IMG/VR virus record: IMGVR_UViG_3300035661_000001 | Span: 310,001 to 374,000 of that record | Direction: 5' to 3' (one strand) | DNA: 64,000 nucleotides | Shown: positions 48,190 to 60,278 of the stretch, in pieces | Layout of the letters: each line of letters starts with the position of its first letter | Position numbering within the stretch: position 1 is the stretch's first letter | Position numbers and translations under genes: made by a program | Notes under the pieces: generated by a model | Told to the model about the DNA's origin: nothing | The model's database searches: none | What the model saw: the letters and a program-made list of their open reading frames with translations, nothing else

Positions 48190-48213
48190 AAATAATAATA
48201 CATTCGTAAACTG

Positions 48214-48258
48214 TAACCCTTGACATATAGTTTTTTAAACTTACCTTGTCAAGGGTTA
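48214..48258. repeat. 12-bp inverted repeat at the end of the structural operon; overlaps a sigma70-like promoter
   Basis: taacccttgaca...tgtcaagggtta; TTGACA (48220-48225)-N16-TACCTT on the plus strand. Confidence 0.65.
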
Positions 48259-48261
48259 TTT

Positions 48262-48534
48262 ATGAGAAAAAAGAGCGAGAGAAGAATTCCTATTCCTGAT
48301 ATAGTGTAGAATAAAGTAGAAGAAAAATTTGGCACAAATTTAAGATATACAGAGCCAAATACTGGTTATCCAGTACCAGTGATCAAATCTACAGAGTGGT
48401 CAGTGGGATTGAATATTAATTTTGCCCCATGGCTTTTTGTTTTTGATCAAAATGATAATACATATTTATTTCGCAGATTTAAATATTCAGAAAAAGAATT
48501 TCTTAGAGTGCTAGATTTGTTAATTTTTGTATAG
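48262..48534 (+). pseudogene. short ORF with in-frame TAG at codon 16; C-terminal LxxF-family member
   Basis: MRKKSERRIPIPDIV*NKVEEKFG...KYSEKEFLRVLDLLIFV*; the frame is otherwise open for 90 codons. Confidence 0.55.
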
Positions 48535-48573
48535 GAAAAAATCATTCCTGGTAATATTTGATCATATCTTAAT

Positions 48574-49317
48574 ATGGACAATTTAAAATGTATTAAGTGT
48601 GAAATAGAAAAAGAGCAAACTGAAGATAATTTTTATTATCGAAAAGACACTAATAAATGGAAGCCAGTTTGCAAAACTTGTTTGAGTGATAAAAACAAAA
48701 AAATATATGCAAACAATTCTGAAGATATAAAAACCAGATGTAATGTATATAGAGATAAAAATCGGAAAGTAATCAATACTAAAGCAAAAATTTACAATTC
48801 AAAACCCGATGTAAAATTAAGAAATAAAACTTATAGACAAGATAATAAAGTGGCTTTAAGAAAAAAAGAAAAAGCGTGGCGCCTCAAAAATCCAGAAAAA
48901 CACAAAGAAATTGCAAGAAAAAAATCTCAGAAACAAAACAAAAAGCCAATGTCAAAAATAAAACATCACATTTCTTGGTGTGTCAGTAAGGCTCTGATAA
49001 AGCAAAATACTTCAAAAGCAAACAAGTCAATAATTAATTATTTAGGTTATTCAATTCAAGAATTGAAAGAACATCTTGAAAAACAATTTGAATCATGGAT
49101 GACTTGGGATAATTATGGTGTTTATAAATTATCTTCTTGGAAAGATGATGATAAGTCTACATGGACTTGGCAAATAGATCACGTCATACCTCATTCGACG
49201 TTTAAGTATATTTCTATGAAAGATGGAGAATTTAAGAAGTGTTGGGCATTAGAAAACTTGAGACCATATTCCGCCAAACAGAATGTTTTGGATGGTGCAA
49301 ATAAAACGAGACATTAA
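48574..49317 (+). CDS. HNH-family homing endonuclease (copy 2)
   Basis: CxxC...CxxC, HLEKQFESWMTW...WQIDHVIP...CWALENLRPYSAKQN. Confidence 0.85.
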   Translation: MDNLKCIKCEIEKEQTEDNFYYRKDTNKWKPVCKTCLSDKNKKIYANNSEDIKTRCNVYRDKNRKVINTKAKIYNSKPDVKLRNKTYRQDNKVALRKKEKAWRLKNPEKHKEIARKKSQKQNKKPMSKIKHHISWCVSKALIKQNTSKANKSIINYLGYSIQELKEHLEKQFESWMTWDNYGVYKLSSWKDDDKSTWTWQIDHVIPHSTFKYISMKDGEFKKCWALENLRPYSAKQNVLDGANKTRH

Positions 49318-50442
49318 ATGAAAATTCTTATAAGACAATTCCTTGGAAAATCTCATAGCTGGAGCATCGTTGGTTGGGGTATCGCTAATGCTTTAATAAA
49401 AAACCATGATGTTCATTTGTTTTCTACGGATGGTATTAAACATACTCCTCAAAATTTAAAACCCTATGTAATAGGTTATACTGAAGAAAATGATCCCAAA
49501 GTTGTGGGAAGAATTCCTGATGCAGAATATGATTGCCAAATCAGCTATACTTGCATGAAAAATTTTCAATGGACATTGAGTAATGGGAACAAAAATAGAT
49601 TTGGCATTTGGTGCTATGAGTGGGCTGGTAAAAATGTATTACCAAATGGATTTGCAAAATCCTATCAATCTTGTGATCAAATCCTAGCTCCTAGCCAATT
49701 TGCAAAACAAGTTTTTATGGACTCAGGGGTTCCCGAATTTTCAATTAAAGTTATTTCTCATGGAATAAATTCTGAACAATATGTACAGAATACTACTATT
49801 AAACTTCCAACAAATAAAAAATACAAACTATTTGCAAACATAGCTCAACCTCATATTCGTAAAAATATTCCAGGGTTATTAAAAGCTTATGGTAAAGCTT
49901 TTAATAAACATGATGATGTTTGTTTAATTTTGAAATGTGGTAAAACACCCAAGAAAAGATTTGATTTCGAAGTAGCGTTTGATAAATGTTTACATGATTT
50001 TTACACGCAATTTCCAAATCATGCAGAAGTTAAAATTTTTGCCGATTTTGTTGAAGACATCTCGGCTCTTTATAGAAGTGTAGATACGGTAATCACATTG
50101 GCTCATTGTGAAGGATTTTATTTTCCGGGACTTGAAGCTCTTGCTTCTGGCAAATCAGTTATTGCTCCCAGGTGGGGAGGTCAATTAGATTTTCTGAATG
50201 ATAATAATGCTTTGCTCATTAATGGTAAAGAGTCTAGAGCTAATCCACAAAGCATGTATTGGGATAGTAAAAATAATGCAATTTGGTTTGAACCAGACAT
50301 TAATGATGCTGTTGATAAAATGAAATTTGCGTACCAAAATTACGAATCTTTGAATTCTAAATCAGAAGAGAATCGCCCCGCTATTTTAGAAAAATTTGAT
50401 TGGTCTATAATAACAAATCAAATTTTAGATTTATGTAAATAA
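49318..50442 (+). CDS. GT-B (GT4-like) glycosyltransferase
   Basis: PSQF...VISHGI, RKNIPGLLKAY, EGFYFPGLEALASGKSVI (E-x7-E signature). Confidence 0.9.
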   Translation: MKILIRQFLGKSHSWSIVGWGIANALIKNHDVHLFSTDGIKHTPQNLKPYVIGYTEENDPKVVGRIPDAEYDCQISYTCMKNFQWTLSNGNKNRFGIWCYEWAGKNVLPNGFAKSYQSCDQILAPSQFAKQVFMDSGVPEFSIKVISHGINSEQYVQNTTIKLPTNKKYKLFANIAQPHIRKNIPGLLKAYGKAFNKHDDVCLILKCGKTPKKRFDFEVAFDKCLHDFYTQFPNHAEVKIFADFVEDISALYRSVDTVITLAHCEGFYFPGLEALASGKSVIAPRWGGQLDFLNDNNALLINGKESRANPQSMYWDSKNNAIWFEPDINDAVDKMKFAYQNYESLNSKSEENRPAILEKFDWSIITNQILDLCK

Positions 50443-50458
50443 ATAATATTAAGGGTGC

Positions 50459-50487
50459 TTGACACCACTCGGGCTCGTACCTATAAT
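50459..50487 (+). promoter_or_regulatory. perfect-consensus sigma70 promoter
   Basis: TTGACA (50459-50464)-17 nt-TATAAT (50482-50487). Confidence 0.85.
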
Positions 50488-50497
50488 TGATAGACTA

Positions 50498-50728
50498 ATG
50501 AAAATGTTAACAAAAGAGCAGCATTTATTATTGAAAAAATTAAATGCTCGAAAAAATAACTGTCAAAAATCGTCCATTTGGTTTAATTGTGAGTTGAAAA
50601 TTATGATTGGTGATCACTGGGAATGTTTCATTTGCGGAGAAAAACCAGCTTTTAAATCAAGTTTACTTGAAATTGATGAACATGGACTTAATCATTTGAA
50701 AGAAAGTAATTTATTATCATTTATTTAA
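50498..50728 (+). CDS. small C2H2-like zinc-finger protein; C-terminal LxxF-family member
   Basis: Start moved to the ATG at 50498, downstream of the promoter; CFIC-x15-HGLNH; ends ESNLLSFI*. Confidence 0.6.
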   Translation: MKMLTKEQHLLLKKLNARKNNCQKSSIWFNCELKIMIGDHWECFICGEKPAFKSSLLEIDEHGLNHLKESNLLSFI

Positions 50729-51442
50729 TTATACATCGTATTTAACTTTCATTTGATACCCGTATTTGGAAAAACGATCGTCAAGATAGCGTGGCACATG
50801 AGTTAACTTATATGTTTGATATAAATTATATTTTCTATCTAAATAAATAGTTGCATTTTCATAAATCCATTCACAAAATTTTGATACTTGTCGACTACCT
50901 CCAAAATCTAACCGGCAAGTGTTACCTGTATATCTTTCCGGACAATATATTTGTGAATTAATATTTATTGTTTTAAATATATTTTGTAGATATATGTTGA
51001 ATTCTTTTGTTGACACAATACTTATATTAAGTTGATCTTGATGTATATTAATACAGCCATCACCATCAAAATATCCTCTTATAAAATGTTTAACTAATTG
51101 ATCATCTAGCCAACTTGGAAAAACTATATTAAAACTTTTTGCGCCGTGGCAGCCTTTTTCTTTTAAACTATTTGATAGTTTCCTACCATTTAGTTCTAAT
51201 CTATAAGCTTTATATTTTCCCTTGTTTTTTAATTGTAAAAATGGTTCACGTGGTTTACCAAAAAAATTGGCGCACTTGAAAAGATGCTCTTTATCACGTT
51301 CTTGTAATTCGATGATGATTTGTCCGGTTTTTTCTTTGTTGTATGCATCGGCATAAAAGAAACCTAGCCAATATGCTTTTTCTTCAGTATCGATATTATC
51401 CATCAAAATTTGATTTGTACAATATTTTGTTTTAAATGTCAT
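50729..51442 (-). CDS. free-standing LAGLIDADG homing endonuclease
   Basis: Two motifs, AYWLGFFYADAY and HFIRGYFDGDGCI; ends ...IYLDRKY. Confidence 0.85.
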   Translation of the reverse strand: MTFKTKYCTNQILMDNIDTEEKAYWLGFFYADAYNKEKTGQIIIELQERDKEHLFKCANFFGKPREPFLQLKNKGKYKAYRLELNGRKLSNSLKEKGCHGAKSFNIVFPSWLDDQLVKHFIRGYFDGDGCINIHQDQLNISIVSTKEFNIYLQNIFKTININSQIYCPERYTGNTCRLDFGGSRQVSKFCEWIYENATIYLDRKYNLYQTYKLTHVPRYLDDRFSKYGYQMKVKYDV

Positions 51443-51507
51443 GAAAGAATATTAAACTATGCCTAAGATTACCGAAGTAAAATTTATTTTTAATTGTGAG
51501 GTGTACA

Positions 51508-52374
51508 GTGCCGGAAGGGGTTGAGGTGCGAATAAGCAGTGAATTAATTAAACCATTAGTGCAAAGCAAATATATAAGCAAAATTCGTTTTGATGATGAT
51601 AGTAGATATGGTGGACCATATAAATCATCACCTGAAGGTTATGAAAAATTCGTGTCAACTTTTAGGAAATTGGAAAATATTGGATATGTCGTTGAGCCTT
51701 TAAAAATAATAGATGTAAAATGTAAAGGTAAATTCATGTACTGGCAATTTGATAATGGCTGGTATATGTACTGCACATTTGGTATGACAGGGCAATGGTC
51801 TCCAACAGCAGGCAAACATGTTTGTTTACATATGAAATTATACGACGATGAAGATAATTTTAGTAATGTGTATTTTAATGATCCTCGACATTTTGGAACA
51901 ATCAAATTTATAGAAACTGAGGCTGAATTAAAAGCCAAATTAAATGAATTAGGTTGGGACCCTTTATCTGGTTCTGTAGATAAATGGGTGCCTTGGTTAA
52001 AATCAGAATTAACAAAATCTAAAAAACCCATTGGTCAAGTATTATTAGACCAAGCAATATTTGCTGGTGTTGGTAATTATATTAGAGCAGAAGCTCTTTA
52101 TGCATCCCAGATCTCCCCGTGGAGAATCTCTAATACTCTCTCAGGGCAGGATACAGAGGTTTTGTGTAAAGCTATCGTCGATGTTATGGAAGAGTCTTAT
52201 AAATGGCAAGGAGCTACCTTGCTGACTTACAAAGACGCTTATGGTAATGAAGGGAAATACGCTTCTTGTTTTAAAGTGTATGGTAAAAAAATCGATCCTT
52301 TTGGTAATCTGATAAAATCAGAGCCAACACCAGATGGCAGAACTATTCATTGGTGCCCTACAATTCAAAAATAA
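51508..52374 (+). CDS. Fpg/Nei family DNA glycosylase/AP lyase, zincless-finger type
   Basis: GTG at 51508 after GAGGTG gives M-P-E-G (catalytic Pro2/Glu3); KGKFM, FGMTG, FNDPRHFG, H2TH LLDQAIFAGVGNYIRAE; C-terminal GRTIHWCPTIQK without a 4-Cys finger. Confidence 0.92.
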   Translation: MPEGVEVRISSELIKPLVQSKYISKIRFDDDSRYGGPYKSSPEGYEKFVSTFRKLENIGYVVEPLKIIDVKCKGKFMYWQFDNGWYMYCTFGMTGQWSPTAGKHVCLHMKLYDDEDNFSNVYFNDPRHFGTIKFIETEAELKAKLNELGWDPLSGSVDKWVPWLKSELTKSKKPIGQVLLDQAIFAGVGNYIRAEALYASQISPWRISNTLSGQDTEVLCKAIVDVMEESYKWQGATLLTYKDAYGNEGKYASCFKVYGKKIDPFGNLIKSEPTPDGRTIHWCPTIQK

Positions 52375-52450
52375 TTTATAAATTGTTTTGTTTTTTAAAT
52401 TCTGTAACGTGTAGATATAGAGGTAGCAAATCTTTTTATAAGAGAAAAAT

Positions 52451-53443
52451 ATGTCGTTATTAAATAAGATATTGATATTTTTAGGCGTTGCGGTTGTAAT
52501 CTTTGGATTAGGCTTTATTATATACAAGCAAAACGAAATTTCTAACCGTCAGTTAGCAATTGAAGCTCAAATGGTTGGTCAAAAAGAATTGGCTGACAAT
52601 ATTATGAGGTCCCAAAACGGATATGCCACTAAAGATGATATTGAAAAGTTTATTAAAAACAATAATGTAAATTTACAAGCTATTCAAGATGATTTAGACA
52701 AGCTACATGCTAGTTTAATTGCTGCCAATACTATTACTGTCAATAGCCGTGAACAAACGATTACTAATCTACCTAGTAGTGGAACTGGTAGTGTTAATGT
52801 ATCTCCAGTTACGACAGATGTATATGGATATTTGAAAAAAACCCAGCTATTAAATATACATGAAGATTTTAATGGAACCTCAGTACCAATTGGGCAAATT
52901 GGTTTTAGTGCTTGGCAACCTAAGCCTTGGGATATAAAAATTTCTCCCAGAGAATACAAAGTTACAAATATTATAGGAACAGACGATAATCAGCGCGTCT
53001 ATGTTTATAATAAATTCAGCGTTAAAGTTGAAGGTAAAGATTATGATGTAAAAATATCTGCAGCGGAAACTAAACAAGAATTTCCAGAAGCCAAGTGGAG
53101 CTGGTGGAACCCTCGTTTATTTGTTGGTGTAGATGGCGGTGTGAATATTGGTACTACAGCACTGCCAACTAATGGCAGTCGTGTAAAAGGAGAATTTACT
53201 CCCAATCTTAGTCTTGGTATAATGAGCTATGGTAAATTCAAGAATCAACCAGATTTCTCGGTATTACAAATAGGTGTTGGTGTAGGAACAGTCTCCCAAA
53301 AACCACAACTTATAGTCACTCCGGTAGCGTATAATATTGGTAAACATATTCCATTTGTAAATAATACTTATCTAGCACCCTCATTAGCAGTAGGGGTAGA
53401 TGGTTCTGTTTCCCTTATGGGCGGTGTAAGAGTAGGATTATAA
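52451..53443 (+). CDS. N-terminally membrane-anchored protein with coiled coil and C-terminal amphipathic beta-strands
   Basis: Hydrophobic residues 7-25, heptad region, alternating strands ending SLMGGVRVGL. Confidence 0.55.
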   Translation: MSLLNKILIFLGVAVVIFGLGFIIYKQNEISNRQLAIEAQMVGQKELADNIMRSQNGYATKDDIEKFIKNNNVNLQAIQDDLDKLHASLIAANTITVNSREQTITNLPSSGTGSVNVSPVTTDVYGYLKKTQLLNIHEDFNGTSVPIGQIGFSAWQPKPWDIKISPREYKVTNIIGTDDNQRVYVYNKFSVKVEGKDYDVKISAAETKQEFPEAKWSWWNPRLFVGVDGGVNIGTTALPTNGSRVKGEFTPNLSLGIMSYGKFKNQPDFSVLQIGVGVGTVSQKPQLIVTPVAYNIGKHIPFVNNTYLAPSLAVGVDGSVSLMGGVRVGL

Positions 53444-54396
53444 TGAGTAAAAAGAAAGTTTTAATTACAGGTTCGTGTGGTTTTGTAATTGGCAATTTAA
53501 TTAGAAAAGCTATTTATGAAAAACAGCCATATCAATTTGTTAGTGTAGATAAAGTAAGCGTAAATGCTTTAAATTCTATGTACTGGAATAAAAATCATAC
53601 TTTTCATATTGCTGACATAAGAGATCAACATGTAATTGATGTTATTTTTCAATTTGAAAAGCCGGATATTGTTATTCATGGTGCGGCGGCAACTTCTTTT
53701 GATGAAGACCCTAATAGCTTAGTAAGCTCCAATGTATTAGGCACACAAGTTATGATTAATGCGTGTATAAAACATAAAGTGGATAAATTAATTTACATTA
53801 GTACTGATGAGGTGTACGGTCAATTATCTAATGAATCAGATGATTCTTGGACCGAAGATTCTCCAATGAATCCTAGAAATTTTTATGCGGCTACAAAAGC
53901 GTCTGGAGAACTATTGATAAGGGCAGCTCATCAGTCACATGGATTAAAATACAATATTACTCGTAGCTCAAATAATTATGGTCCTCGTCAAACTCCAGAC
54001 AAACTGGTGCCAAAAATAATTAAATGCGTATTACAAGATAGTAAAATTCCGGTATATGGTCAAGGCTTACAAATTAGAGATTGGACCCACGTTTTTGATA
54101 ATTGTGGGGCTATATTGACTATTTTAAATAAAGGTGAAGATAATCAAATATATAATATCTCTTCAAATCAGGAGTTTACAAATATTGAAGTCGTACAACA
54201 CGTTTGTAATGTTTTAAGTAAAGGTCATAATTTGATTGAACATATTGTTGATCCACGCGGAAATGGACATGATTTCAGATACGGTGTAAATTCTACTAAA
54301 ATTCGTTCACTAGGCTGGGAGCCAAAATTTAAATTCAAAGATGGTATAGTAAGTACCACAGAATGGTTCCAGGTAAACCAGTGGTTTATTAAATAA
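53443..54396 (+). CDS. dTDP-glucose 4,6-dehydratase-like NAD-dependent epimerase/dehydratase (RmlB-like)
   Basis: VLITGSCGFVIG, STDEVYG, YAATK, SNNYGPRQ, YGQGLQIRDW, GHDFRY. Confidence 0.88.
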   Translation: MSKKKVLITGSCGFVIGNLIRKAIYEKQPYQFVSVDKVSVNALNSMYWNKNHTFHIADIRDQHVIDVIFQFEKPDIVIHGAAATSFDEDPNSLVSSNVLGTQVMINACIKHKVDKLIYISTDEVYGQLSNESDDSWTEDSPMNPRNFYAATKASGELLIRAAHQSHGLKYNITRSSNNYGPRQTPDKLVPKIIKCVLQDSKIPVYGQGLQIRDWTHVFDNCGAILTILNKGEDNQIYNISSNQEFTNIEVVQHVCNVLSKGHNLIEHIVDPRGNGHDFRYGVNSTKIRSLGWEPKFKFKDGIVSTTEWFQVNQWFIK

Positions 54397-54408
54397 AGAA
54401 CAATAAAT

Positions 54409-54663
54409 ATGTCATTAAAAATTACTCTTGAACTGCTAAAATTAGCACATGATCATATAGAGATCAAGACTGGTCCTTACAGTAAAGGTAAGCACGCTTT
54501 AACGTTAGAAAAAAATGAATTAATGTTAGTAATCAATACTGGACATGAATTCAAAAATTTCTTATTAGATGAGGCGGACTTATTAAAAAATCCATACGAT
54601 TTGATTATGGAAATTAAAAGGATAGTCGAAAAACCCTCCATTAACCTAAGTGAGTTAAATTAA
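54409..54663 (+). CDS. hypothetical protein
   Basis: 84-aa ORF tightly packed between neighbouring genes. Confidence 0.55.
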   Translation: MSLKITLELLKLAHDHIEIKTGPYSKGKHALTLEKNELMLVINTGHEFKNFLLDEADLLKNPYDLIMEIKRIVEKPSINLSELN

Positions 54664-54664
54664 T

Positions 54665-56020
54665 ATGCCAGTAGTGCATTCTATACAACACGATAACCCA
54701 GAAGAATTGGTTGACGATATGACAAACGAAAACGAAGAGAAAGAACAGCAAGATAAATTAGCCGCCCTAAAAGCGAAAAGCCAGGCAAAACAACAAGAAA
54801 AAGAAGGTAAGATGGCTTCAAAAATAGTAGCGAAGAAAGAAAGAAGTTTGAATTTAGGTATTCTTGGTTCAGGTCAAGCCGGATCAAGAATCGCAGAATC
54901 TTTCTATAAACTTGGATACGATTCAGTTGTAGTTAATACTGCTATGCAAGATCTTAAGTTTATTGACATTCCAGATTCTAATAAATTACTGCTTGAATAT
55001 GGTTTAGGTGGAGCTGCAAAAGAAATAGAGATTGGTCGGGCGGCGGCAGAAGCACACCGTGGCTCCATATTAGATCTTGTTAATGACAAATTAGCAAATT
55101 CGCAGGTCAATTTACTATGTCTTAGTTTAGGCGGCGGATCCGGAGCAGGATCATGTGAAACATTAGTAGATCTACTATCTGAATTAGGCAAGCCATTAGT
55201 TGTTATTACTGTGCTTCCAATGGATACGGAAGATTCTCAAACCAAAAGCAATGCCCTAGAGACTTTATCAAAATTAGCTAAATTAACACAATCTAAAAAG
55301 GTTAACAATTTGATTGTAGTAGACAATGCAAAGATAGAAGCAATTTTGCATGATGTTAGTCAGGTAGATTTTTATGGTACGGCGAATAAAGCTATTGTTG
55401 ATCCAATAGATGTTTTCAACACCTTATCTTCAATGGCTTCTTCTACTAAAGCATTAGATCCAATGGAATGGTCAAAACTTTTCATTGACGGAGAAGGTAT
55501 AAGCGTCTATGGCGAATTCTCTGTAGATAATTATCAAGAAGATACTGCTATCGCAGAAGCTGTTATTAACAATTTGTCCGGCAATCTTCTTGCTGAAGGT
55601 TTTGATCTTAAGCAATCAAAATATGTAGGATTCATTATTGCTGCAAATAAGACGGTTTGGTCTAAAATCCCAGCATCAAGCGTCAATTATGCAAGTAGCA
55701 TGATTAACGATCTTTGTGGAAATCCAAAAGGCGTGTTCAAGGGAATGTATATTGTTGATTCTCTTGAAGATACCGTAAAAGTATTCTCTATGTTTTCTGG
55801 TCTTGGACTTCCCGCAGGAAGAATTGAACAGTTAAAAAGCGAAACTAAAGAGCTACAATCAAAAGCTAAGAATAAAGATGATTCTAGAAATTTGACTTTA
55901 CAGCTTGATACTGGAACTAGTGAGACTGTGTCAGCGGCTCAAAAAATCAAAGAGAAGATTGCTCAGAAATCTTCAGCTTTTGGCAAATTAATGGGCGGAG
56001 TTGTTGATCGTCGTAAATAA
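54665..56020 (+). CDS. tubulin/FtsZ-family GTPase (PhuZ/TubZ-like)
   Basis: GSGQAGSRIA, VVVNT, GLGGAAKE, tubulin signature LGGGSGAG, VLP, VVDN; the start could be 54665 or an internal ATG. Confidence 0.88.
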   Translation: MPVVHSIQHDNPEELVDDMTNENEEKEQQDKLAALKAKSQAKQQEKEGKMASKIVAKKERSLNLGILGSGQAGSRIAESFYKLGYDSVVVNTAMQDLKFIDIPDSNKLLLEYGLGGAAKEIEIGRAAAEAHRGSILDLVNDKLANSQVNLLCLSLGGGSGAGSCETLVDLLSELGKPLVVITVLPMDTEDSQTKSNALETLSKLAKLTQSKKVNNLIVVDNAKIEAILHDVSQVDFYGTANKAIVDPIDVFNTLSSMASSTKALDPMEWSKLFIDGEGISVYGEFSVDNYQEDTAIAEAVINNLSGNLLAEGFDLKQSKYVGFIIAANKTVWSKIPASSVNYASSMINDLCGNPKGVFKGMYIVDSLEDTVKVFSMFSGLGLPAGRIEQLKSETKELQSKAKNKDDSRNLTLQLDTGTSETVSAAQKIKEKIAQKSSAFGKLMGGVVDRRK

Positions 56021-56039
56021 AACTGTAATTTAAATGAAA

Positions 56040-56078
56040 ATCTCGGTCTTCTGATATATTTTGTCAGAAGACCGAGAT
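56040..56078. repeat. 15-bp inverted repeat with TGATATAT at the stem/loop junction (terminator and/or promoter hairpin)
   Basis: atctcggtcttctga-tatattttg-tcagaagaccgagat, followed by a T-run. Confidence 0.75.
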
Positions 56079-56084
56079 ATTTTT

Positions 56085-57542
56085 ATGAATGAAATTGTCG
56101 TTTTAAATAACAAAAAATGCGTCATCAAATCAGAGGACACAGAACTATTAAAAAAAGTAAAGAATTTTCTGTCGTTTAAAATGGCAGGAGCAGAGTATTC
56201 ACCGGCTTATCAAAATGGCTGGAATGGTATAACATATTTATTAACTAAAACTAATAAATTTGATTTGGGATTGTTATCCAAAGTAGAGAATTTTCTCACA
56301 GAAAAAGGTTTTGAATATCAAGTCACGGATACTCGTGCCCCCGTGCAATTTAATGAGCCTTTGGCTATTTCTGATAACTTAAAAAAACACGGATTCATAC
56401 CACGTGACTATCAGTTAAAAATGCTAGACGTAGCAATGAAGAACAATAAAGGAATTGTTCGAGCTTGTACGGGTGCGGGCAAAACACTTACTATTGCAAT
56501 GATTACGGCTCAACTAAATAAGCCGACTATGATTTATGTTATTGGATTGGATTTATTAGATCAATTTCACAAGTTATTCAGCAAACTATTTAATGAAAAA
56601 ATAGGTTACATTGGAAACGGCACTGTAGATATTGCACGAATAAATATCGCATCTATATGGACCGTTGGTAAGGCTTTAAAAATAGACAATCCAATTACTG
56701 ATGCTGAAGAATTAAATGATGGAGAAGTTTTTGTAGAAAGCAATAGAGATAAAATTGTAAATGCTCTCAAAGAATCTAAAGTTAGTTTTTTTGATGAGTC
56801 ACACGTTTGTACAACCAATACTATTTCTACAATTTATAAAAACATTAACCCTGAACATATCTACGGATTTAGCGGAACGCCATTTAGAGATGACGGCTCT
56901 GATCTTTTAATAAACGGTATTCTTGGAGAGCAAATTATTAATGTATCAGCCTCTGAATTAATAGACAAAGGTGTTCTAGCTAGACCGCTGATTAAATTCG
57001 TATCTGTGCCTAAAATGAGTTGTTCGGGACAATATCTTTCTGTGTATAAAGATTACATAGTGGAAAATGAAATAAGAAATAATCTTATTGTAGAGAACAC
57101 TAAATCTTTAATAGATAAAAAATATACTCCGCTAGTATTGTTTAAACAAATCAAACATGGAGAAATTATCTATCAAAAATTATTGGATGCAGGAATATTA
57201 TGCGCCATTTTGCATGGCAATGACGATTTGGAAAGACGACAAGAAGTAAAAGATCAATTGGTTAATGGTGAAATTCAAGCTATTGTAGCAAGTACTATTT
57301 TTGATATTGGTTTAGATTTACCACAACTAAGCGGATTAGTATTATGTGGTGGTGGTAAAAGTACCATCAGATGTTTACAGAGAGTTGGACGTGTACTTAG
57401 AATGGTGCCAGGTAAAAAATTTGCCGCTGTTATAGATTTTTATGACCAAGCAAAATTTTTAAAAAAACATGCACAGCTTCGGCACGCCACCTATGCATCT
57501 GAGCCTGGCTTTAAAGTAATAAAATCCAAGGAAATGAAGTAA
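56085..57542 (+). CDS. SF2 DNA helicase, UvsW-like
   Basis: PRDYQ, TGAGKT, DESH, SGTPFR, GLDLP, QRVGRVLR; likely start is the ATG at 56085, because the listed TTG lies inside the hairpin. Confidence 0.88.
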   Translation: MNEIVVLNNKKCVIKSEDTELLKKVKNFLSFKMAGAEYSPAYQNGWNGITYLLTKTNKFDLGLLSKVENFLTEKGFEYQVTDTRAPVQFNEPLAISDNLKKHGFIPRDYQLKMLDVAMKNNKGIVRACTGAGKTLTIAMITAQLNKPTMIYVIGLDLLDQFHKLFSKLFNEKIGYIGNGTVDIARINIASIWTVGKALKIDNPITDAEELNDGEVFVESNRDKIVNALKESKVSFFDESHVCTTNTISTIYKNINPEHIYGFSGTPFRDDGSDLLINGILGEQIINVSASELIDKGVLARPLIKFVSVPKMSCSGQYLSVYKDYIVENEIRNNLIVENTKSLIDKKYTPLVLFKQIKHGEIIYQKLLDAGILCAILHGNDDLERRQEVKDQLVNGEIQAIVASTIFDIGLDLPQLSGLVLCGGGKSTIRCLQRVGRVLRMVPGKKFAAVIDFYDQAKFLKKHAQLRHATYASEPGFKVIKSKEMK

Positions 57543-57544
57543 AT

Positions 57545-57572
57545 TTGACGAACTGCTATTCGGCGTTACATT
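57545..57572 (+). promoter_or_regulatory. sigma70-like promoter
   Basis: TTGACG-16 nt-TACATT, ending 21 nt upstream of the ATG at 57594. Confidence 0.55.
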
Positions 57573-57593
57573 GTAAGTACGTAAATACATACC

Positions 57594-57965
57594 ATGTCAA
57601 AACTTAATAATATTGGAATTATTCATAATGATTTTTATAAAGAACAATCAATTAATAATGTTATTAATGAAATAGAAATTTATATTATTCATCCTTTTCC
57701 AAAATTAGAAGTAATACAATTACCAAATATTTATATTAATCATAGCGCGTTAGCTGACGAGTTTTCAGAAAATGGCATTATGTATTTTTATGATCTTAAA
57801 ATTTGTAAAACAGATTTAGAAGAGTTGGTAACTCTGCGTCAATTCAAAAATGTCATGTTACTTAAAATGGAACATGATTTTTTGTTTGCTGACATGACCA
57901 TGTCTAAATTTTTAGAAGTAGCTAACAAAACTCGTCGGAAATCAAATCTGAAATTATTTTGGTGA
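57594..57965 (+). CDS. hypothetical protein; C-terminal LxxF-family member
   Basis: 123 aa ending RKSNLKLFW*. Confidence 0.6.
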   Translation: MSKLNNIGIIHNDFYKEQSINNVINEIEIYIIHPFPKLEVIQLPNIYINHSALADEFSENGIMYFYDLKICKTDLEELVTLRQFKNVMLLKMEHDFLFADMTMSKFLEVANKTRRKSNLKLFW

Positions 57966-57968
57966 TCA

Positions 57969-58145
57969 ATGCCTAAGAAAAAAGAAATAGATTTAACAGG
58001 AGGAATTTTAAATGAAGTTCCTAATGAATATTATAAGAAATTTTTCGATAAGTTCGAAGAGATAAAAATATTAGAAATTGAAAAATGGAAACCTGTACAT
58101 ATTTTTGTAATGATATATGGAAACAAAAATATGTACAATTTGTAA
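57969..58145 (+). pseudogene. orphan N-terminal fragment paralogous to the 58901 gene
   Basis: MPKKKEIDLTGGILNEVPNEYYKKFFDKFEEIKILEIEKWKPVHIF... aligns with ...GAPNEKYEKFFKKFEEVSILDPSSWSVTHLL of 58901; similarity stops at the HNH start. Confidence 0.75.
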
Positions 58146-58911
58146 TGACGAAAAAGATATTGAAGAATTTTTACTTAGAACTGATTCGGGAACTCGCCGA
58201 AAATCTTGCAAAAAATGCTACAATAGTAAAGTTACAAATTATAAGAAAATTAACAAAGATATTATTTCATTAAAAAATAAAAAATATCAAGAAATAAATA
58301 AAGACAGTAGAAGAACATACAGAAAAAAATATCACACAAATAATAAAGATCGTGAAAATACCCGTAGTATTAATTATGCAAATTCTAATCAAGAAAAAAT
58401 AGCAAGTTATCAAAAATCGTATAGGAATGATCATGTCGAAAAAATTAGCACTTATGGTATAGAGTATCGTAAAAAAAATAAAGATAAATTAAATAAAAAA
58501 CAAAGAATTTATTCAAAAACAAGAAAGAGCATTGACCCAGCATTCAAATTAAGATCTAGATTTTCAACTAGCATATGGATATCCTTAAATTCAAATAATA
58601 GTACTAAAAATGGAAATTCTATATTAAAATATCTTCCTTATTCTATACAAGAATTAAAAGAATATTTAGAAAAACAATTTGAGCACTGGATGAATTGGAA
58701 TAATTGGGGAAGATTTTCTAAATCATGGGATGATAATAATTTAAAAACATGGAAATGGCAAATAGATCATATTATTCCTCAAAGTATTTTACCATATACA
58801 TCTATGGAAGATAGTAATTTCAAGAAGTGTTGGGCATTAGAAAACTTAAGACCTTATTCTGCAAAATAAAATGTATTAGATGGAGTAACTAAAATAAGAC
58901 ATGAAAAATGA
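58117..58911 (+). pseudogene. HNH homing endonuclease (copy 3) with premature TAA at 58867-58869
   Basis: ...LRPYSAK*NVLDGVTKIRHEK*; the other two copies read YSAKQNVLDG / YSSKQNFLDG at this position. Confidence 0.8.
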
Positions 58912-59491
58912 TAATATCAATATAAAATTAGAAGGAGCGCCCAATGAAAAATACGAAAAATTTTTTAAAAAATTCGAAGAGGTATCTATCTTAGATCCAT
59001 CTTCTTGGAGTGTAACTCATCTTTTAGGATATTTTTGTAAAAAATATAAAGAGCAATATCAAACAGATTATAAATTCAAATTCAATAGTCCCACACCATC
59101 CAAATGTTTTGAGGTTTTTCAAATCAAAAAACTAGCAATGAATTTAACAGCCGATCCATTTTTGTTAAAAGAATATATTGATTGGGTGTATGATAATAAA
59201 GTTGTTAAAGCCAAAAGAAAATTAACTTCTATTTCTTTCATGACTAATGAAGGTGTCGTGAATGAATATAAAATAAATGTTCTTTTATCGAATGATAGGG
59301 AATCAAGTATAGATCGATCTGCATTTTTGCCTGAAAAATACAAAAATGTATTTGAAGAAATAGGTATGACCATTAATACTTATGGTGAATTAGCATTCAT
59401 TCATCAAATGGATGACGAAAAGGTAGCTGCGGCTTTTTCAAGAATAGAATTAATTGGTTTTGATAAGTCTAAATTAGAAAATATTGTATGA
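58901..59491 (+). CDS. hypothetical protein, possibly replication initiator-associated
   Basis: 196 aa, helical; located upstream of the DnaC-like and DnaB genes. Function inferred from position only. Confidence 0.5.
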   Translation: MKNDNINIKLEGAPNEKYEKFFKKFEEVSILDPSSWSVTHLLGYFCKKYKEQYQTDYKFKFNSPTPSKCFEVFQIKKLAMNLTADPFLLKEYIDWVYDNKVVKAKRKLTSISFMTNEGVVNEYKINVLLSNDRESSIDRSAFLPEKYKNVFEEIGMTINTYGELAFIHQMDDEKVAAAFSRIELIGFDKSKLENIV

Positions 59492-59880
59492 TATTGGTTA
59501 ATTGTAACTCTTCAGAATATTTAGATGAAGTGGGATATATTTTTCCAACTGATATTTTTGATATGATTCCATTATTGTATACTACAGAGTTTATTAAATG
59601 TAGTGATACTAATGTGAATTATTTACACACTGTTGTTAGAACCAAAATTGAAGAAAAATCGCAATGGGATTTAACTTGGGGCAGACCATTATCATGGTCT
59701 GGTCCATATGATAAATTGAAAAATTTGAATAAAGTAATTGTTTTCTATATGGAATCAGATGATTTGACAAAAAATGAAATGAAAGATATCGTTTTTTGTG
59801 TTGTATGTTCTGAACAATATACAAAAGAACAATTATTAACAATTATGAAGAGATATTCAAAATTGAAGGTGTTTTTATGA
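59488..59880 (+). CDS. hypothetical protein; C-terminal LxxF-family member
   Basis: 130 aa, ATGA-coupled at both ends, ending YTKEQLLTIMKRYSKLKVFL*. Confidence 0.6.
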   Translation: MILVNCNSSEYLDEVGYIFPTDIFDMIPLLYTTEFIKCSDTNVNYLHTVVRTKIEEKSQWDLTWGRPLSWSGPYDKLKNLNKVIVFYMESDDLTKNEMKDIVFCVVCSEQYTKEQLLTIMKRYSKLKVFL

Positions 59881-60278
59881 TTCCACAAAAAGGAAGTCAC
59901 GTTAAGTGTGTAATGCGTAATAATTTAGTTTTGGAGGGAGTTGTAGAGTCATGGTCAGATGATCAGTCTATATTACGATCTTTAGATGACTCATCTCTTT
60001 CTATTATACAGCACTCCTTGGAAGATATAGTGGTGATCAAGGTTATCCTTAAAAAGCCCCTTCAAACAAAAAAAGAATTAGAAATAAAATTTGAAGAAGA
60101 GGTTAAGAAGCCGAGCGATGATAATCTGAGATTGAAAAACATAGTAGAATTAAAAAATATGTTAAATAATCAAGAAAAGAAAATTATCGCAGAGAATTTG
60201 AAAAATCATCATATTGGAGAGATTAAGAAAATAAATTATGGACAACCTGGATTTTTCCCGAAGCCGAGCATTAAATAA
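59877..60278 (+). CDS. hypothetical protein with possible Sm/Hfq-like N-terminal fold and coiled-coil tail
   Basis: GSHVKCVMRNNLVLEGVVESWSDDQSILRS resembles the Sm1 motif. Confidence 0.45.
   Translation: MIPQKGSHVKCVMRNNLVLEGVVESWSDDQSILRSLDDSSLSIIQHSLEDIVVIKVILKKPLQTKKELEIKFEEEVKKPSDDNLRLKNIVELKNMLNNQEKKIIAENLKNHHIGEIKKINYGQPGFFPKPSIK

What the first reader, a model, noticed from the sequence alone, without database searches (positions are those of the whole stretch)
48220..59880. Family of unrelated short ORFs sharing a C-terminal L-x-x-F-hydrophobic tag, mostly behind their own sigma70 promoter
Seen: four short ORFs with no other obvious similarity end alike: 48262 ...EKEFLRVLDLLIFV*, 50498 ...HLKESNLLSFI*, 57594 ...TRRKSNLKLFW* and 59488 ...IMKRYSKLKVFL*. 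The consensus is an amphipathic helix followed by [D/N/K]-L-[L/K]-x-F-[V/I/W/L]-stop. No core gene in the window ends this way. Three have a TTGAC(A/G)-N16/17-TAxxxT promoter immediately upstream, one of them a perfect consensus. Inference: promoter-plus-ORF cassettes for early host-takeover proteins. The shared tail could be a docking, localisation, packaging or degradation signal recognised by one partner; it also resembles the L-x-x-F core of sliding-clamp-binding motifs. I am not aware of a description of this arrangement. With n=4 it needs whole-genome support.
Basis: partly seen in the sequence, partly recalled or inferred. Interest (0 to 1): 0.8.

Follow-up and report, generated by a model that had tools for sequence, protein, structure and literature searches.

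The report
Shared C-terminal tag in huge phages
Roughly one in thirty proteins of this 452-kb phage and its relatives, all small, fast-evolving and mostly unrelated to each other, end in the same ten-residue tail placed exactly at the C-terminus; it looks like an address label read by one partner that is still unknown, and I found no description of it.

Summary
In the 451,956-bp phage genome, 15 of 735 ORFs end in L-x-x-F-hydrophobic, against 1.0 expected. Two complete relatives give 17 vs 0.9 and 24 vs 1.1. Phage G, AT-rich and of similar size, gives 3 vs 1.0. The full motif is [R/K](-9) Φ(-8) x x L(-5) [K/L](-4) [A/V/L](-3) F(-2) x(-1)-COOH. It ends exactly at the C-terminus and almost never occurs inside proteins. 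Codons vary, so the constraint is on the protein. Homologues keep the tail while the rest of the protein diverges; with the tail removed, 112 carriers fall into 76 sequence clusters. One lineage has L/I at -2 in all five carriers, and a 435-kb relative uses M>L>F there. That argues for a common reader that changes along with the tags. The promoter half of the finding fails. Sigma70-like sites are at chance level, carriers sit tightly packed in operons, and one claimed -35 box is an arm of a hairpin. Clamp binding is not supported. I favour tethering to a protease (the phages encode a ClpP pair), with capsid targeting as the close rival.

The parts
48379..48534 (+). Tag-bearing ORF 1 (51 aa as an open ORF; tag = last 12 codons, 48496-48531)
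   Evidence: Homologues in L003 and L040 (74-94 aa) end RVLNLLIFV, RILDLLIFV and RLLDLLVFT.
48262..48378 (+). Upstream in-frame part of ORF 1, cut off by TAG at 48307-48309. Either a nonsense-interrupted gene or one read through by the phage's own CTA-anticodon tRNA.
   Evidence: Translation. Residual homology to the longer homologues. Suppressor-type tRNA at genome 80119-80195. TAG is not generally recoded.
48213..48258 (+). 13-bp-stem hairpin just after the 1179-aa gene.
   Evidence: dG -24.4 kcal/mol, z -5.7, 0 of 200 shuffles fold as well.
50459..50728 (+). Tag-bearing ORF 2 (89 aa from TTG 50459; 76 aa from ATG 50498, the more likely start; tag 50690-50725). A LAGLIDADG-type gene on the minus strand abuts its stop.
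   Evidence: No homologue was found in the related loci.
50459..50487 (+). Perfect TTGACA-17-TATAAT match overlapping the start of ORF 2
   Evidence: The genome has two perfect matches and shuffles give 0-3, so function is unproven.
57594..57965 (+). Tag-bearing ORF 3 (123 aa; tag 57927-57962), in the syntenic slot between the UvsW-like helicase and the 196-aa gene
   Evidence: The four homologues all end in K-[L/M/A]-F-W. AF2 model: pLDDT 68, last helix 103-117, last six residues coil with low confidence.
57545..57572 (+). Weak sigma70-like match (TTGACG-16-TACATT, 9 of 12) upstream of ORF 3
   Evidence: Matches of this quality occur at chance frequency.
59488..59880 (+). Tag-bearing ORF 4 (130 aa; tag 59842-59877). 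It overlaps both neighbours by 4 nt (ATGA) and has no promoter of its own.
   Evidence: It matched only itself among 5.8 billion proteins. A weak homologue in L040 ends RIVNIKAFI.

Best explanation
The tail is a modular C-terminal address tag, not a leftover of common ancestry or of base composition. Its form is [R/K](-9)-Φ(-8)-x-x-L(-5)-[K/L](-4)-[A/V/L](-3)-F(-2)-x(-1)-COOH. About 25-60 small, fast-evolving accessory proteins per genome carry it in a clade of roughly 430-480-kb phages from mats, sediments and freshwater. One common partner reads it, recognising the free C-terminus and burying the penultimate side chain. That partner changes together with the tags: the residue at -2 is F in most lineages, L/I in one, and M>L>F in another. 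The genome statistics are shown; that a common partner reads the tag is my inference from them.

The next step is inferred. I think the tag most likely tethers its carriers to a Clp-type protease. All six complete or near-complete tag-bearing genomes that I checked encode a tandem pair of one active and one inactive ClpP. The tag would then act either as a degron that times the removal of these proteins, or as an adaptor handle. In the adaptor version the variable body binds a host protein and the constant tail delivers it for degradation, as the C-terminal ClpX-binding peptide of SspB does, or the C-terminal PRANC/F-box of poxvirus ankyrin proteins (both from established knowledge).

My odds are 0.65 that the tail is a tag read by a common partner. 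Within that, 0.3 goes to protease tethering, 0.25 to capsid targeting, and the rest to other or unknown partners.
For: Enrichment at C-termini:
- 15 vs 1.0 expected in the window's genome.
- 17 vs 0.9 and 24 vs 1.1 in relatives with 43% and 33% GC.
- No enrichment in phage G, which has 30% GC and 724 ORFs.

Protein level: the Leu, Lys, Phe and stop codons all vary.

Independent position: R/K at -9 in 30 of 33 cluster representatives, although that position was not used to pick them.

Register lock: PSSM>=8 windows end exactly at the C-terminus 21, 13 and 28 times in three genomes. At offsets 1-15 the counts are 0, 0 and 1.

Modularity:
- 112 carriers fall into 76 clusters once the tail is removed.
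- Only 1 of 378 profile-profile pairs reaches 90% probability.
- The bodies include an alpha/beta model, a zinc-ribbon all-beta model, and one that looked to me like MORN-type repeats (by eye, not tested).

Conservation:
- All 27 homologues found through the body alone keep F at -2 and a related tail.
- The tail is more conserved than the body in 51 of 55 pairs.
- Carriers occupy the same syntenic slots between core genes in relatives even where their bodies are no longer recognisably similar.

Concerted change:
- A scorer blind to -2 and -1 finds 56 of 60 carriers with F outside L155, and 5 of 5 with L/I in L155. By my arithmetic from the counts, hypergeometric P = 1.5e-5.
- Two of the L155 subfamilies are body-homologous to F-bearing proteins elsewhere.
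- In G006, 40 ORFs end [V/I/C]-M-x against 2.1 expected. The generic skeleton there gives M 32 vs 0.8 expected, L 16 vs 2.7 and F 13 vs 1.3.

Clp lead:
- Two tandem ClpP genes score 154-157 bits. One has the catalytic Ser and His replaced.
- The pair is present in G000, G001, G003, G006, G008 and G009.
Against: No partner was identified.

The Clp link is only co-occurrence:
- Phage G also has a ClpP-like gene but no tag.
- No ClpX/ClpA-type unfoldase, PDZ domain, S41 protease or proteasome was found in these phages.
- An IGF motif in one AAA protein is not conserved.
- The tag does not resemble known ClpX motifs.

In the zinc-ribbon subfamily, AF2 models the tail as a confident helix (residues 99-112; pLDDT, averaged over 10-residue blocks, 82-93 there). 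It could therefore be an integral part of that fold.

The lineage shifts could partly reflect lineage-specific expansions from different founders. No body homology links the G006 carriers to the F-lineage carriers. The L155 lineage is known from a single 11-kb contig.

ORFs were called with a crude greedy caller, and the PSSM was trained on the same clade.
Confidence: 0.65

Rival explanations
1. Capsid-targeting tag. The tail docks its carriers onto the scaffold or the inner capsid surface, so that a varied set of small proteins (for example anti-defence proteins) is packaged and injected with the DNA. This would be a C-terminal counterpart of the T4 internal-protein capsid targeting sequence.
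For: [quoted passage not shown] It fits the hypervariable bodies, the conserved terminal tag, the conserved slots and the lineage-specific tag variants. From established knowledge, C-terminal docking peptides on HK97-fold shells are known from encapsulin cargo and from P22 and herpesvirus scaffolds. A capsid built for about 450 kb has room for many internal proteins.
Against: None of the 22 carriers lies in the roughly 160-kb block (genome 199-358 kb) that holds the large structural genes. They sit in operons with replication-type genes. 25-60 kinds per genome is far more than the handful of T4 internal proteins. No large protein of scaffold size carries the tag. No proteomics is available.
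Confidence: 0.25
2. Structural helix of divergent paralogues. All carriers descend from a few ancestral small proteins. Their last helix is kept for folding or self-association, and the tail has no separate reader.
For: The zinc-ribbon subfamily is a true family with 739 clusters at 50% identity. Its conserved helix ...KIKTYLVFS ends the protein, and AF2 models it with high confidence. Tandem arrays of paralogues exist. The bodies evolve so fast that lost similarity is plausible.
Against: A fold element would not be expected to stop exactly one residue after the key Phe in 76 otherwise dissimilar clusters, with essentially no offset variants. The predicted bodies have different architectures. 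In L155 at least two subfamilies changed F to L/I together. In the alpha/beta carrier the last six residues are modelled outside the helix with low confidence.
Confidence: 0.12
3. Sliding-clamp-binding motif. The L-x-x-F-Φ core plugs into the hydrophobic cleft of a phage or host clamp.
For: The spacing Φ(-8)..L(-5)..F(-2)Φ(-1) matches Q-x-x-[LIM]-x-x-[FY][FY], and L-K-A-F resembles the L-S-L-F of QL[SD]LF (motif definitions from established knowledge). Clamp motifs often lie at C-termini.
Against: The defining Gln is absent: position -6 is K/N/D/T and -8 is hydrophobic. Clamp motifs are not locked one residue from the end. No T4-type or DnaN-type clamp domain was detected in the phage. The phage Pol III alpha ends ...FLDLDVEFESD and lacks the tag. 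25-60 clamp clients of unknown function per genome is implausible.
Confidence: 0.04
4. Membrane-targeting amphipathic helix, like the C-terminal helix of MinD or FtsA, that brings the carriers to the cell membrane.
For: Basic residues at -9, -6 and -4 flank hydrophobic ones at -8, -5, -2 and -1. An aromatic or aliphatic end is typical of interfacial helices (comparison from established knowledge).
Against: Membrane helices tolerate shifts and substitutions. Here F at -2 is nearly invariant within a lineage, the register is exact, and the residue changes lineage-wide. In the main class a Lys at -4 sits inside the hydrophobic arc.
Confidence: 0.07
5. A signal acting during translation: a nascent-peptide or stop-context element that slows termination and aids coupling to the next gene.
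For: It would explain the exact register to the stop codon. 7 of 22 carriers overlap the next gene by ATGA.
Against: All three stop codons are used. Several carriers are followed by a convergent gene or by a gap of more than 150 nt. A 12-residue conserved peptide on folded proteins of 50-200 aa, with lineage-wide changes, is not what known arrest peptides look like.
Confidence: 0.03
6. Chance or composition: AT-rich coding gives many Leu, Lys and Phe codons near stop codons.
For: The motif was defined after seeing four cases, and the genome is AT-rich.
Against: Eleven further cases lie outside the window, against about 0.9 expected. The motif holds in a 43% GC and a 48% GC relative. It is absent from 30% GC phage G. 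It is almost absent from internal positions.
Confidence: 0.005

Closest known systems
Capsid targeting sequence (CTS) of T4-type internal proteins
   Same: A short conserved terminal peptide is the only thing shared by small, hypervariable phage accessory proteins encoded in plastic regions (PMC3012670).
   Different: The CTS is N-terminal and is removed by the prohead protease. This tag is C-terminal and locked to the free end, it marks 25-60 proteins per genome, and packaging has not been shown.
C-terminal tethering and degradation signals of AAA+ proteases (ssrA / ClpX C-motifs; the C-terminal ClpX-binding peptide of the adaptor SspB)
   Same: Both involve recognition of a free C-terminus in an exact register, and a constant terminal peptide on variable bodies. 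The phages encode a ClpP pair.
   Different: The sequence is unlike LAA-COOH or the SspB peptide. No ClpX-type unfoldase was found in the phage. Neither degradation nor tethering was tested.
HbYX motif (hydrophobic-Tyr-any at the extreme C-terminus of proteasome activators)
   Same: It is the same formal pattern: a hydrophobic residue at -3, a key penultimate aromatic or hydrophobic residue at -2, and a free choice at -1.
   Different: HbYX sits on ring ATPases and activators and docks into 20S alpha-ring pockets. No proteasome subunit was found in the phage, and the carriers here are small monomer-sized proteins.
PIP box and bacterial beta-clamp-binding motif (Qxx[LIM]xx[FY][FY]; QL[SD]LF)
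   Same: The hydrophobic spacing L-x-x-F-Φ, and frequent placement near C-termini.
   Different: There is no Gln and the register is strict. The carriers are not replication or repair enzymes, no phage clamp was found, and the polymerase lacks the tag.
Encapsulin cargo-loading peptides; C-terminal coat-binding ends of P22 and herpesvirus scaffolding proteins
   Same: A C-terminal peptide or helix on unrelated cargo docks to the inside of an HK97-fold shell (established knowledge).
   Different: The consensus differs (encapsulin: G-S-L-rich). Those peptides are not locked to the last residue. There is no evidence that these proteins are in virions.
Poxvirus ankyrin-repeat proteins with C-terminal PRANC/F-box
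   Same: Large, fast-evolving viral families in which a variable target-binding part is joined to a constant C-terminal element that plugs into a degradation machine (established knowledge).
   Different: That case is eukaryotic, uses a domain of about 60 residues, and the partner (Skp1) is known. Here the element is about 10 residues and the partner is unknown.

Membership tests
Bacterial beta-clamp-binding motif QL[SD]LF | Gln at motif position 1 | tested here: not met
   The corresponding position -6 is K12 N8 D4 T4 E2 Q2 among 33 cluster representatives.
Bacterial beta-clamp-binding motif QL[SD]LF | Leu at position 2 and Phe/Leu at position 5 | tested here: met
   Position -5 is L28 I3 M2. 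Position -2 is F in all 33, though F at -2 was part of the selection.
Bacterial beta-clamp-binding motif QL[SD]LF | Carried by replication or repair proteins that work on the clamp | tested here: not met
   No carrier has a Pfam or PHROG assignment. The phage Pol III alpha lacks the tag.
Bacterial beta-clamp-binding motif QL[SD]LF | Physical binding to the clamp cleft | not testable with these tools
   No complex prediction or assay was available. No clamp gene was found in the phage.
PIP box (Qxx[LIM]xx[FY][FY]) | Gln three residues before the aliphatic position | tested here: not met
   Position -8 is I8 L7 V4 Y3 E3 M2.
PIP box (Qxx[LIM]xx[FY][FY]) | Two consecutive aromatic residues | tested here: inconclusive
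   F at -2 is constant. Position -1 is W in 10 of 33 and otherwise L/I/V/T.
ssrA-like ClpX C-motif 1 | Small non-polar last residues (LAA-COOH type) at the free C-terminus | tested here: not met
   The tails end A/V/L-F-[W/L/I/V/S/T]. Only the dependence on the free terminus is shared.
HbYX motif | Hydrophobic residue, then Tyr (or Phe), then any residue, as the last three | tested here: met
   Position -3 is A14 V5 L5 I4, -2 is F, -1 varies. The register is exact.
HbYX motif | Located on a ring-forming activator or ATPase that docks onto a 20S proteasome | tested here: not met
   The carriers are proteins of 45-202 aa with no ATPase domain. PF00227 was not found in the phage.
T4-type capsid targeting sequence | N-terminal position with a prohead-protease cleavage site | tested here: not met
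   The conserved element is at the C-terminus, and the N-termini are not conserved.
T4-type capsid targeting sequence | The only conserved element of hypervariable small proteins | tested here: met
T4-type capsid targeting sequence | Directs encapsidation | not testable with these tools
   There is no virion proteome, and no RNA run was listed.
Encapsulin cargo-loading peptide | C-terminal consensus rich in G-S-L (LTVGSL type) | tested here: not met
   The consensus here is [RK]Φxx L[KL][AVL]F x.

The most novel reading that the evidence does not exclude
These huge phages run an addressing system of their own. A phage-encoded receptor, possibly linked to their active/inactive ClpP pair, reads Φ-[F/M/L]-x-COOH on dozens of hypervariable small adaptor proteins. 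Each adaptor binds a different host protein, defence systems included, and hands it over for destruction. The tag 'dialect' (F, M or L at -2) co-evolves with the receptor in each phage lineage. That would make it a bacterial-virus counterpart of the poxvirus ankyrin/F-box adaptor families.
Probability: 0.15. Interest if true: 0.95.

Novelty: new variant of a known kind. Interest (0 to 1): 0.8.

Why it matters
Terminal address tags are known in principle: the T4 capsid targeting sequence, encapsulin cargo peptides and ssrA-type degrons. I found no description of a proteome-wide tag in phages that is locked to the C-terminus, marks 3-6% of all genes and differs between lineages. It gives a handle on the 'dark matter' of huge-phage genomes. 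Dozens of orphan proteins per genome can now be grouped by a shared property, and one pull-down with a 12-residue peptide could name their common partner. If that partner is a protease or the capsid interior, the tag marks the phage's arsenal of host-directed or injected proteins. It could also serve as a portable tag for loading or degrading proteins. The zinc-ribbon subfamily alone has 739 sequence clusters in public data and no family annotation.

Tried and rejected
- DNA-level motif (palindrome, promoter or terminator at gene ends): rejected. The Leu, Lys, Phe and stop codons vary, and the motif survives at 43% and 48% GC.
- Composition artefact: rejected with internal-position controls and phage G.
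- Sigma70 cassettes: rejected. A k-mer search of upstream regions gave no clear promoter motif, only tRNA T-loops and a TGATATA-type word.
- Known families: nothing in Pfam or PHROGs for 30 carriers. The ESM Atlas gave only unnamed viral clusters.
- Fold searches of both models (PDB Foldseek, AFDB clusters, VIA wide): no convincing match. Best TM is below 0.5 and best Z is 6.2.
- Clamp: PF02916, PF00712 and PF02768 are absent. No PolB. Pol III alpha has no tag.
- Other readers of C-termini encoded by the phage: S41 protease, proteasome, PDZ and ClpX-type AAA_2 were not found.
- IGF tripeptides near the C-terminus of the AAA protein at genome 87321-88529, as a possible ClpP-docking element: not conserved in G001, so dropped.
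- Extending the L155 (L/I at -2) lineage: the one new hit (L169) came from a different, tag-less phage, apparently through the body's repeats (by eye). The metagenome scan found nothing closer than 72%.
- Orthologous F-to-M pairs between the F-lineages and G006: no body homology was detectable.
- Expression data: DNA runs from microbial mats and sediments only, and no RNA run was listed.
- One regex had an indexing slip. It is not cited.

Full report
**What the window is.** The window is bases 310,001-374,000 of a single-contig virus record of 451,956 bp with direct terminal repeats. The genome has 36.5% GC and about 735 ORFs of 40 aa or more by a simple greedy caller, 596 of them on one strand, plus 41 tRNA genes. 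It encodes:
- a tubulin/FtsZ-like protein (window 54665-56020), whose nearest match in the phage collection is Bacillus phage G at 23.5% identity;
- a DnaE-type Pol III alpha;
- a RecA-like protein and a tandem ClpP pair.

It is found in microbial-mat and sediment metagenomes. IMG/VR and JGI hold dozens of relatives with 43-88% tubulin identity, several of them 430-480 kb long.

**The observation.** All four ORFs and their tails are there. One correction is needed. The first ORF cannot start at 48262, because a TAG at 48307-48309 closes that frame. The open ORF is 48379-48534 (51 aa). The stretch after the TAG still aligns with the 74-94-aa homologues in related phages. So the gene is either nonsense-interrupted or read through by the phage's own CTA-anticodon tRNA. 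TAG is otherwise an ordinary, rare stop codon here.

**Whole-genome test.**
- L..F[VILMWFY] as the last five residues occurs in 15 of 735 ORFs, against 1.0 expected from its frequency at internal positions (P 3e-13).
- The codons for Leu (TTA, TTG, CTT, CTG, CTA), Lys and Phe vary, and so do the stop codons. The constraint is therefore on the protein.
- Aligning the tails of one representative per sequence cluster extends the motif upstream. R/K stands at -9 in 30 of 33, and hydrophobic residues at -8 and -11, although none of these positions was used for selection.
- A 12-residue PSSM at score >=8 finds 21 C-termini and 7 of 132,564 internal windows.
- A looser variant, K-Φ-K-T-Φ-Φ-Φ-F-[S/I/T], marks a zinc-ribbon subfamily.

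**Replication and controls.** I fetched two complete relatives.
- G001 (480,838 bp, 43% GC) has 17 strict matches against 0.9 expected.
- G003 (432,844 bp, 33% GC) has 24 against 1.1 expected.
- Phage G (497,513 bp, 30% GC, 724 ORFs) has 3 against 1.0 expected and nothing with PSSM>=8.

So this is not a property of AT-rich giant phages in general.

**Register.** In the three genomes the motif ends exactly at the C-terminus 21, 13 and 28 times. It ends 1-15 residues before the terminus 0, 0 and 1 times. Exactly one residue, of almost any kind, follows the Phe.

**Are the carriers related?** Mostly not, as far as sequence can tell.
- 112 distinct carriers from three genomes and the loci have a median length of 114 aa (range 45-202).
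- With the last 12 residues removed they fall into 76 phmmer clusters.
- Only 1 of 378 profile-profile comparisons between tail-less clusters reaches 90% probability.
- No Pfam or PHROG family matches any of 30 carriers.
- AlphaFold models differ. ORF 57594 gives an alpha/beta model (pLDDT 68) whose last helix ends at -7, leaving the final six residues as low-confidence coil.
- The zinc-ribbon subfamily is all-beta with a confident C-terminal helix (pLDDT 88). Neither model has a convincing structural neighbour.
- The zinc-ribbon subfamily is itself large: 739 clusters at 50% identity in public proteins. It nearly always ends ...K-I-K-T-Y-L-V-F-S at the very C-terminus.

**Do homologues keep the tail?** Yes.
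- For the window's ORFs, 57594 has four homologues that all end K-[L/M/A]-F-W.
- 48379 has four homologues ending L-L-[I/V]-F-[V/T].
- 59488 matched only itself in the 5.8-billion-protein search and has one weak homologue ending N-I-K-A-F-I.
- 50459 has no homologue.
- I searched with bodies only, against bodies only. Two look-alikes were set aside: an HNH endonuclease and a protein of unknown function (genome 122013) whose longer homologues lack the tail. After that, all 27 homologues have F at -2 and a related tail.
- The tail is more conserved than the body in 51 of 55 pairs (mean identity 50% vs 28%). Both members of each pair had been chosen for having a tail, so this comparison is biased.

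**Genomic setting.**
- Core gene order around the tubulin is conserved across relatives. Carriers occupy the same five slots between core genes, often with bodies that no longer match each other.
- In the whole genome the 22 clearest carriers all lie outside the 160-kb stretch 199-358 kb, which holds the large structural genes, the polymerase and the ClpP pair.
- They are tightly packed. The median upstream gap is 2.5 nt. Only 18% have 30 nt or more upstream, against 39-41% of other genes. Seven of the 22 overlap the next gene by ATGA.

**Promoters.** Sigma70-like matches are at chance level in the region (68 against 71 +/- 10) and in the genome (221 against 173-210 per shuffle, i.e. 207-224 with the 11/12 and 12/12 classes counted). 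The TTGACA at 48220 is one arm of a strong hairpin that follows the upstream gene. The perfect consensus at 50459-50487 may be real, but it is not statistically distinguishable from chance. The 'promoter-plus-ORF cassette' picture is not supported.

**Lineage-specific dialects.** This is the most telling result.
- I used a scorer that ignores positions -2 and -1 on non-redundant ORFs of the related loci. It finds 56 of 60 carriers with F at -2 everywhere except in L155 (tubulin 66% identical). There all five carriers have L or I. By my arithmetic the hypergeometric P is 1.5e-5.
- Two of the L155 subfamilies are body-homologous to F-bearing proteins in other lineages.
- L163 (59% tubulin identity) shows a [F/Y]-K-K-L-Φ-Φ-Φ-x tail on six small ORFs.
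- In the complete genome G006 (434,688 bp, 48% GC, 61% tubulin identity), 58 ORFs have Met at -2, 3.5 times background. Forty end [V/I/C]-M-x against 2.1 expected.
- With one generic skeleton, observed and expected counts by residue at -2 are as follows:

| Genome | Enriched residue(s) at -2, observed / expected |
|---|---|
| G000 | F 25 / 1.6 |
| G001 | F 29 / 1.4 |
| G003 | F 39 / 1.9 |
| G006 | M 32 / 0.8, L 16 / 2.7, F 13 / 1.3 |
| Phage G | none enriched |

- A small contig holds three tandem zinc-ribbon paralogues ending I-F-A, V-M-Q and I-M-S.
- More distant tubulin-bearing phages (43-55% identity) show no tag within 10 kb of the tubulin gene.

**Interpretation.** Several features belong to a modular address tag read in trans by one partner that recognises the free C-terminus:
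- an exact register to the C-terminus;
- near-invariance of the penultimate residue within a lineage, with concerted change between lineages;
- free choice of the last residue;
- conservation on bodies that differ in architecture and evolve very fast.

They do not fit a shared fold element or a DNA signal. That much is inference from strong statistics. The identity of the partner is not shown.

**Candidate partners.**
- Clamp binding is unlikely. The Gln is missing, no clamp was found, and the polymerase lacks the tag.
- No PDZ domain, S41 protease, proteasome or ClpX-type unfoldase is encoded.
- The phages do encode a conserved tandem ClpP pair, one copy with the catalytic Ser and His replaced, next to a DksA/TraR-type zinc-finger gene. 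Jumbo-phage ClpP has been noted before as possibly host-directed (PMC7824862). I therefore rank protease tethering first at about 0.3, as a degron or as an adaptor handle.
- Capsid targeting in the manner of the T4 internal proteins (PMC3012670) is a close second at about 0.25.
- A purely structural or self-association role comes next at about 0.12. The confident helix in the zinc-ribbon model supports it.

**Limits.**
- ORFs were called by length and overlap only.
- The PSSM was trained on this clade.
- The L155 lineage rests on one 11-kb contig, and I could not extend it.
- No body homology links the G006 carriers to the F-lineage carriers, so founder effects cannot be excluded there.
- There are no expression or proteome data.
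- The host is unknown.

Noticed in passing
genome G000:C1:80119-80195 (outside the window); window 48307-48309: The phage carries a tRNA with anticodon CTA, which reads TAG. TAG is the rarest stop codon (61 of 735 ORFs) but is not generally recoded. The in-frame TAG in tag-bearing ORF 1 could be a target of this tRNA.
   Followed up: partly
genome G000:C1:217120-218653 (L133): There is a tandem ClpP pair. The first copy (217479-218063) has the catalytic Ser replaced by Asp and the His by Asn, like ClpR. The second (218060-218653) keeps both. A DksA/TraR zinc-finger gene precedes them. The pair is conserved in G001, G003, G006, G008 and G009.
   Followed up: partly
window 57969-58869: An HNH endonuclease gene (58117-58869) is a paralogue of 48574-49317 at 38% identity. 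It sits behind a 58-aa ORF that duplicates the 5' end of the 196-aa gene at 58901-59491 (48% identity over 33 aa). Relatives have neither the fragment nor the HNH gene at this place. It looks like a homing-endonuclease insertion with a partial target duplication.
   Followed up: partly
window 60238-62016: This 592-aa ORF corresponds to genes of 234-236 aa in all relatives examined. The extra 358 residues or so in the middle look like an intein with a homing-endonuclease domain. This was not tested against families.
   Followed up: no
window 50729-51442 (minus strand): A 237-aa ORF with LAGLIDADG-like motifs abuts the stop codon of tag-bearing ORF 2 and is absent from this slot in relatives. 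It is probably another mobile endonuclease. The motifs were judged by eye only.
   Followed up: no
window 56040-56078: A 17-bp-stem hairpin followed by a T-run lies between the tubulin gene and the UvsW-like helicase gene. It is the strongest terminator-like site in the region.
   Followed up: no
genome G000:C1:408269-410264 (L054:14269-16264); alignments A2 and A5: A tandem array of five paralogues belongs to an unannotated family: an N-terminal CxxC...C..H zinc ribbon, a beta-sheet body, and a C-terminal helix ...EPDFSD..KL..KIKTYLVFS. The family has 739 clusters at 50% identity in public proteins, no Pfam family, and no convincing structural neighbour.
   Followed up: partly
genome G000:C1:42-243 and 451744-451945: The same pair of tRNA-Arg(TCT) genes lies at both ends of the record, inside its direct terminal repeat.
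   Followed up: no
G006 (L198-L220), tails of tag-bearing ORFs: In the Met-dialect lineage, Cys is 3.6-fold enriched at position -8 (39 ORFs), giving tails such as C-x-[K/R]-[L/F/Y]-x-V-M-x. The F-lineages have no counterpart to this.
   Followed up: no
window 54409-56020: The tubulin/FtsZ-like gene, with a conserved 84-aa gene just upstream, is syntenic in most of the relatives examined (the small gene was not detected in L007, L038 and L016). It resembles TubZ-type partition modules rather than anything tied to a phage nucleus. This was not examined further.
   Followed up: no
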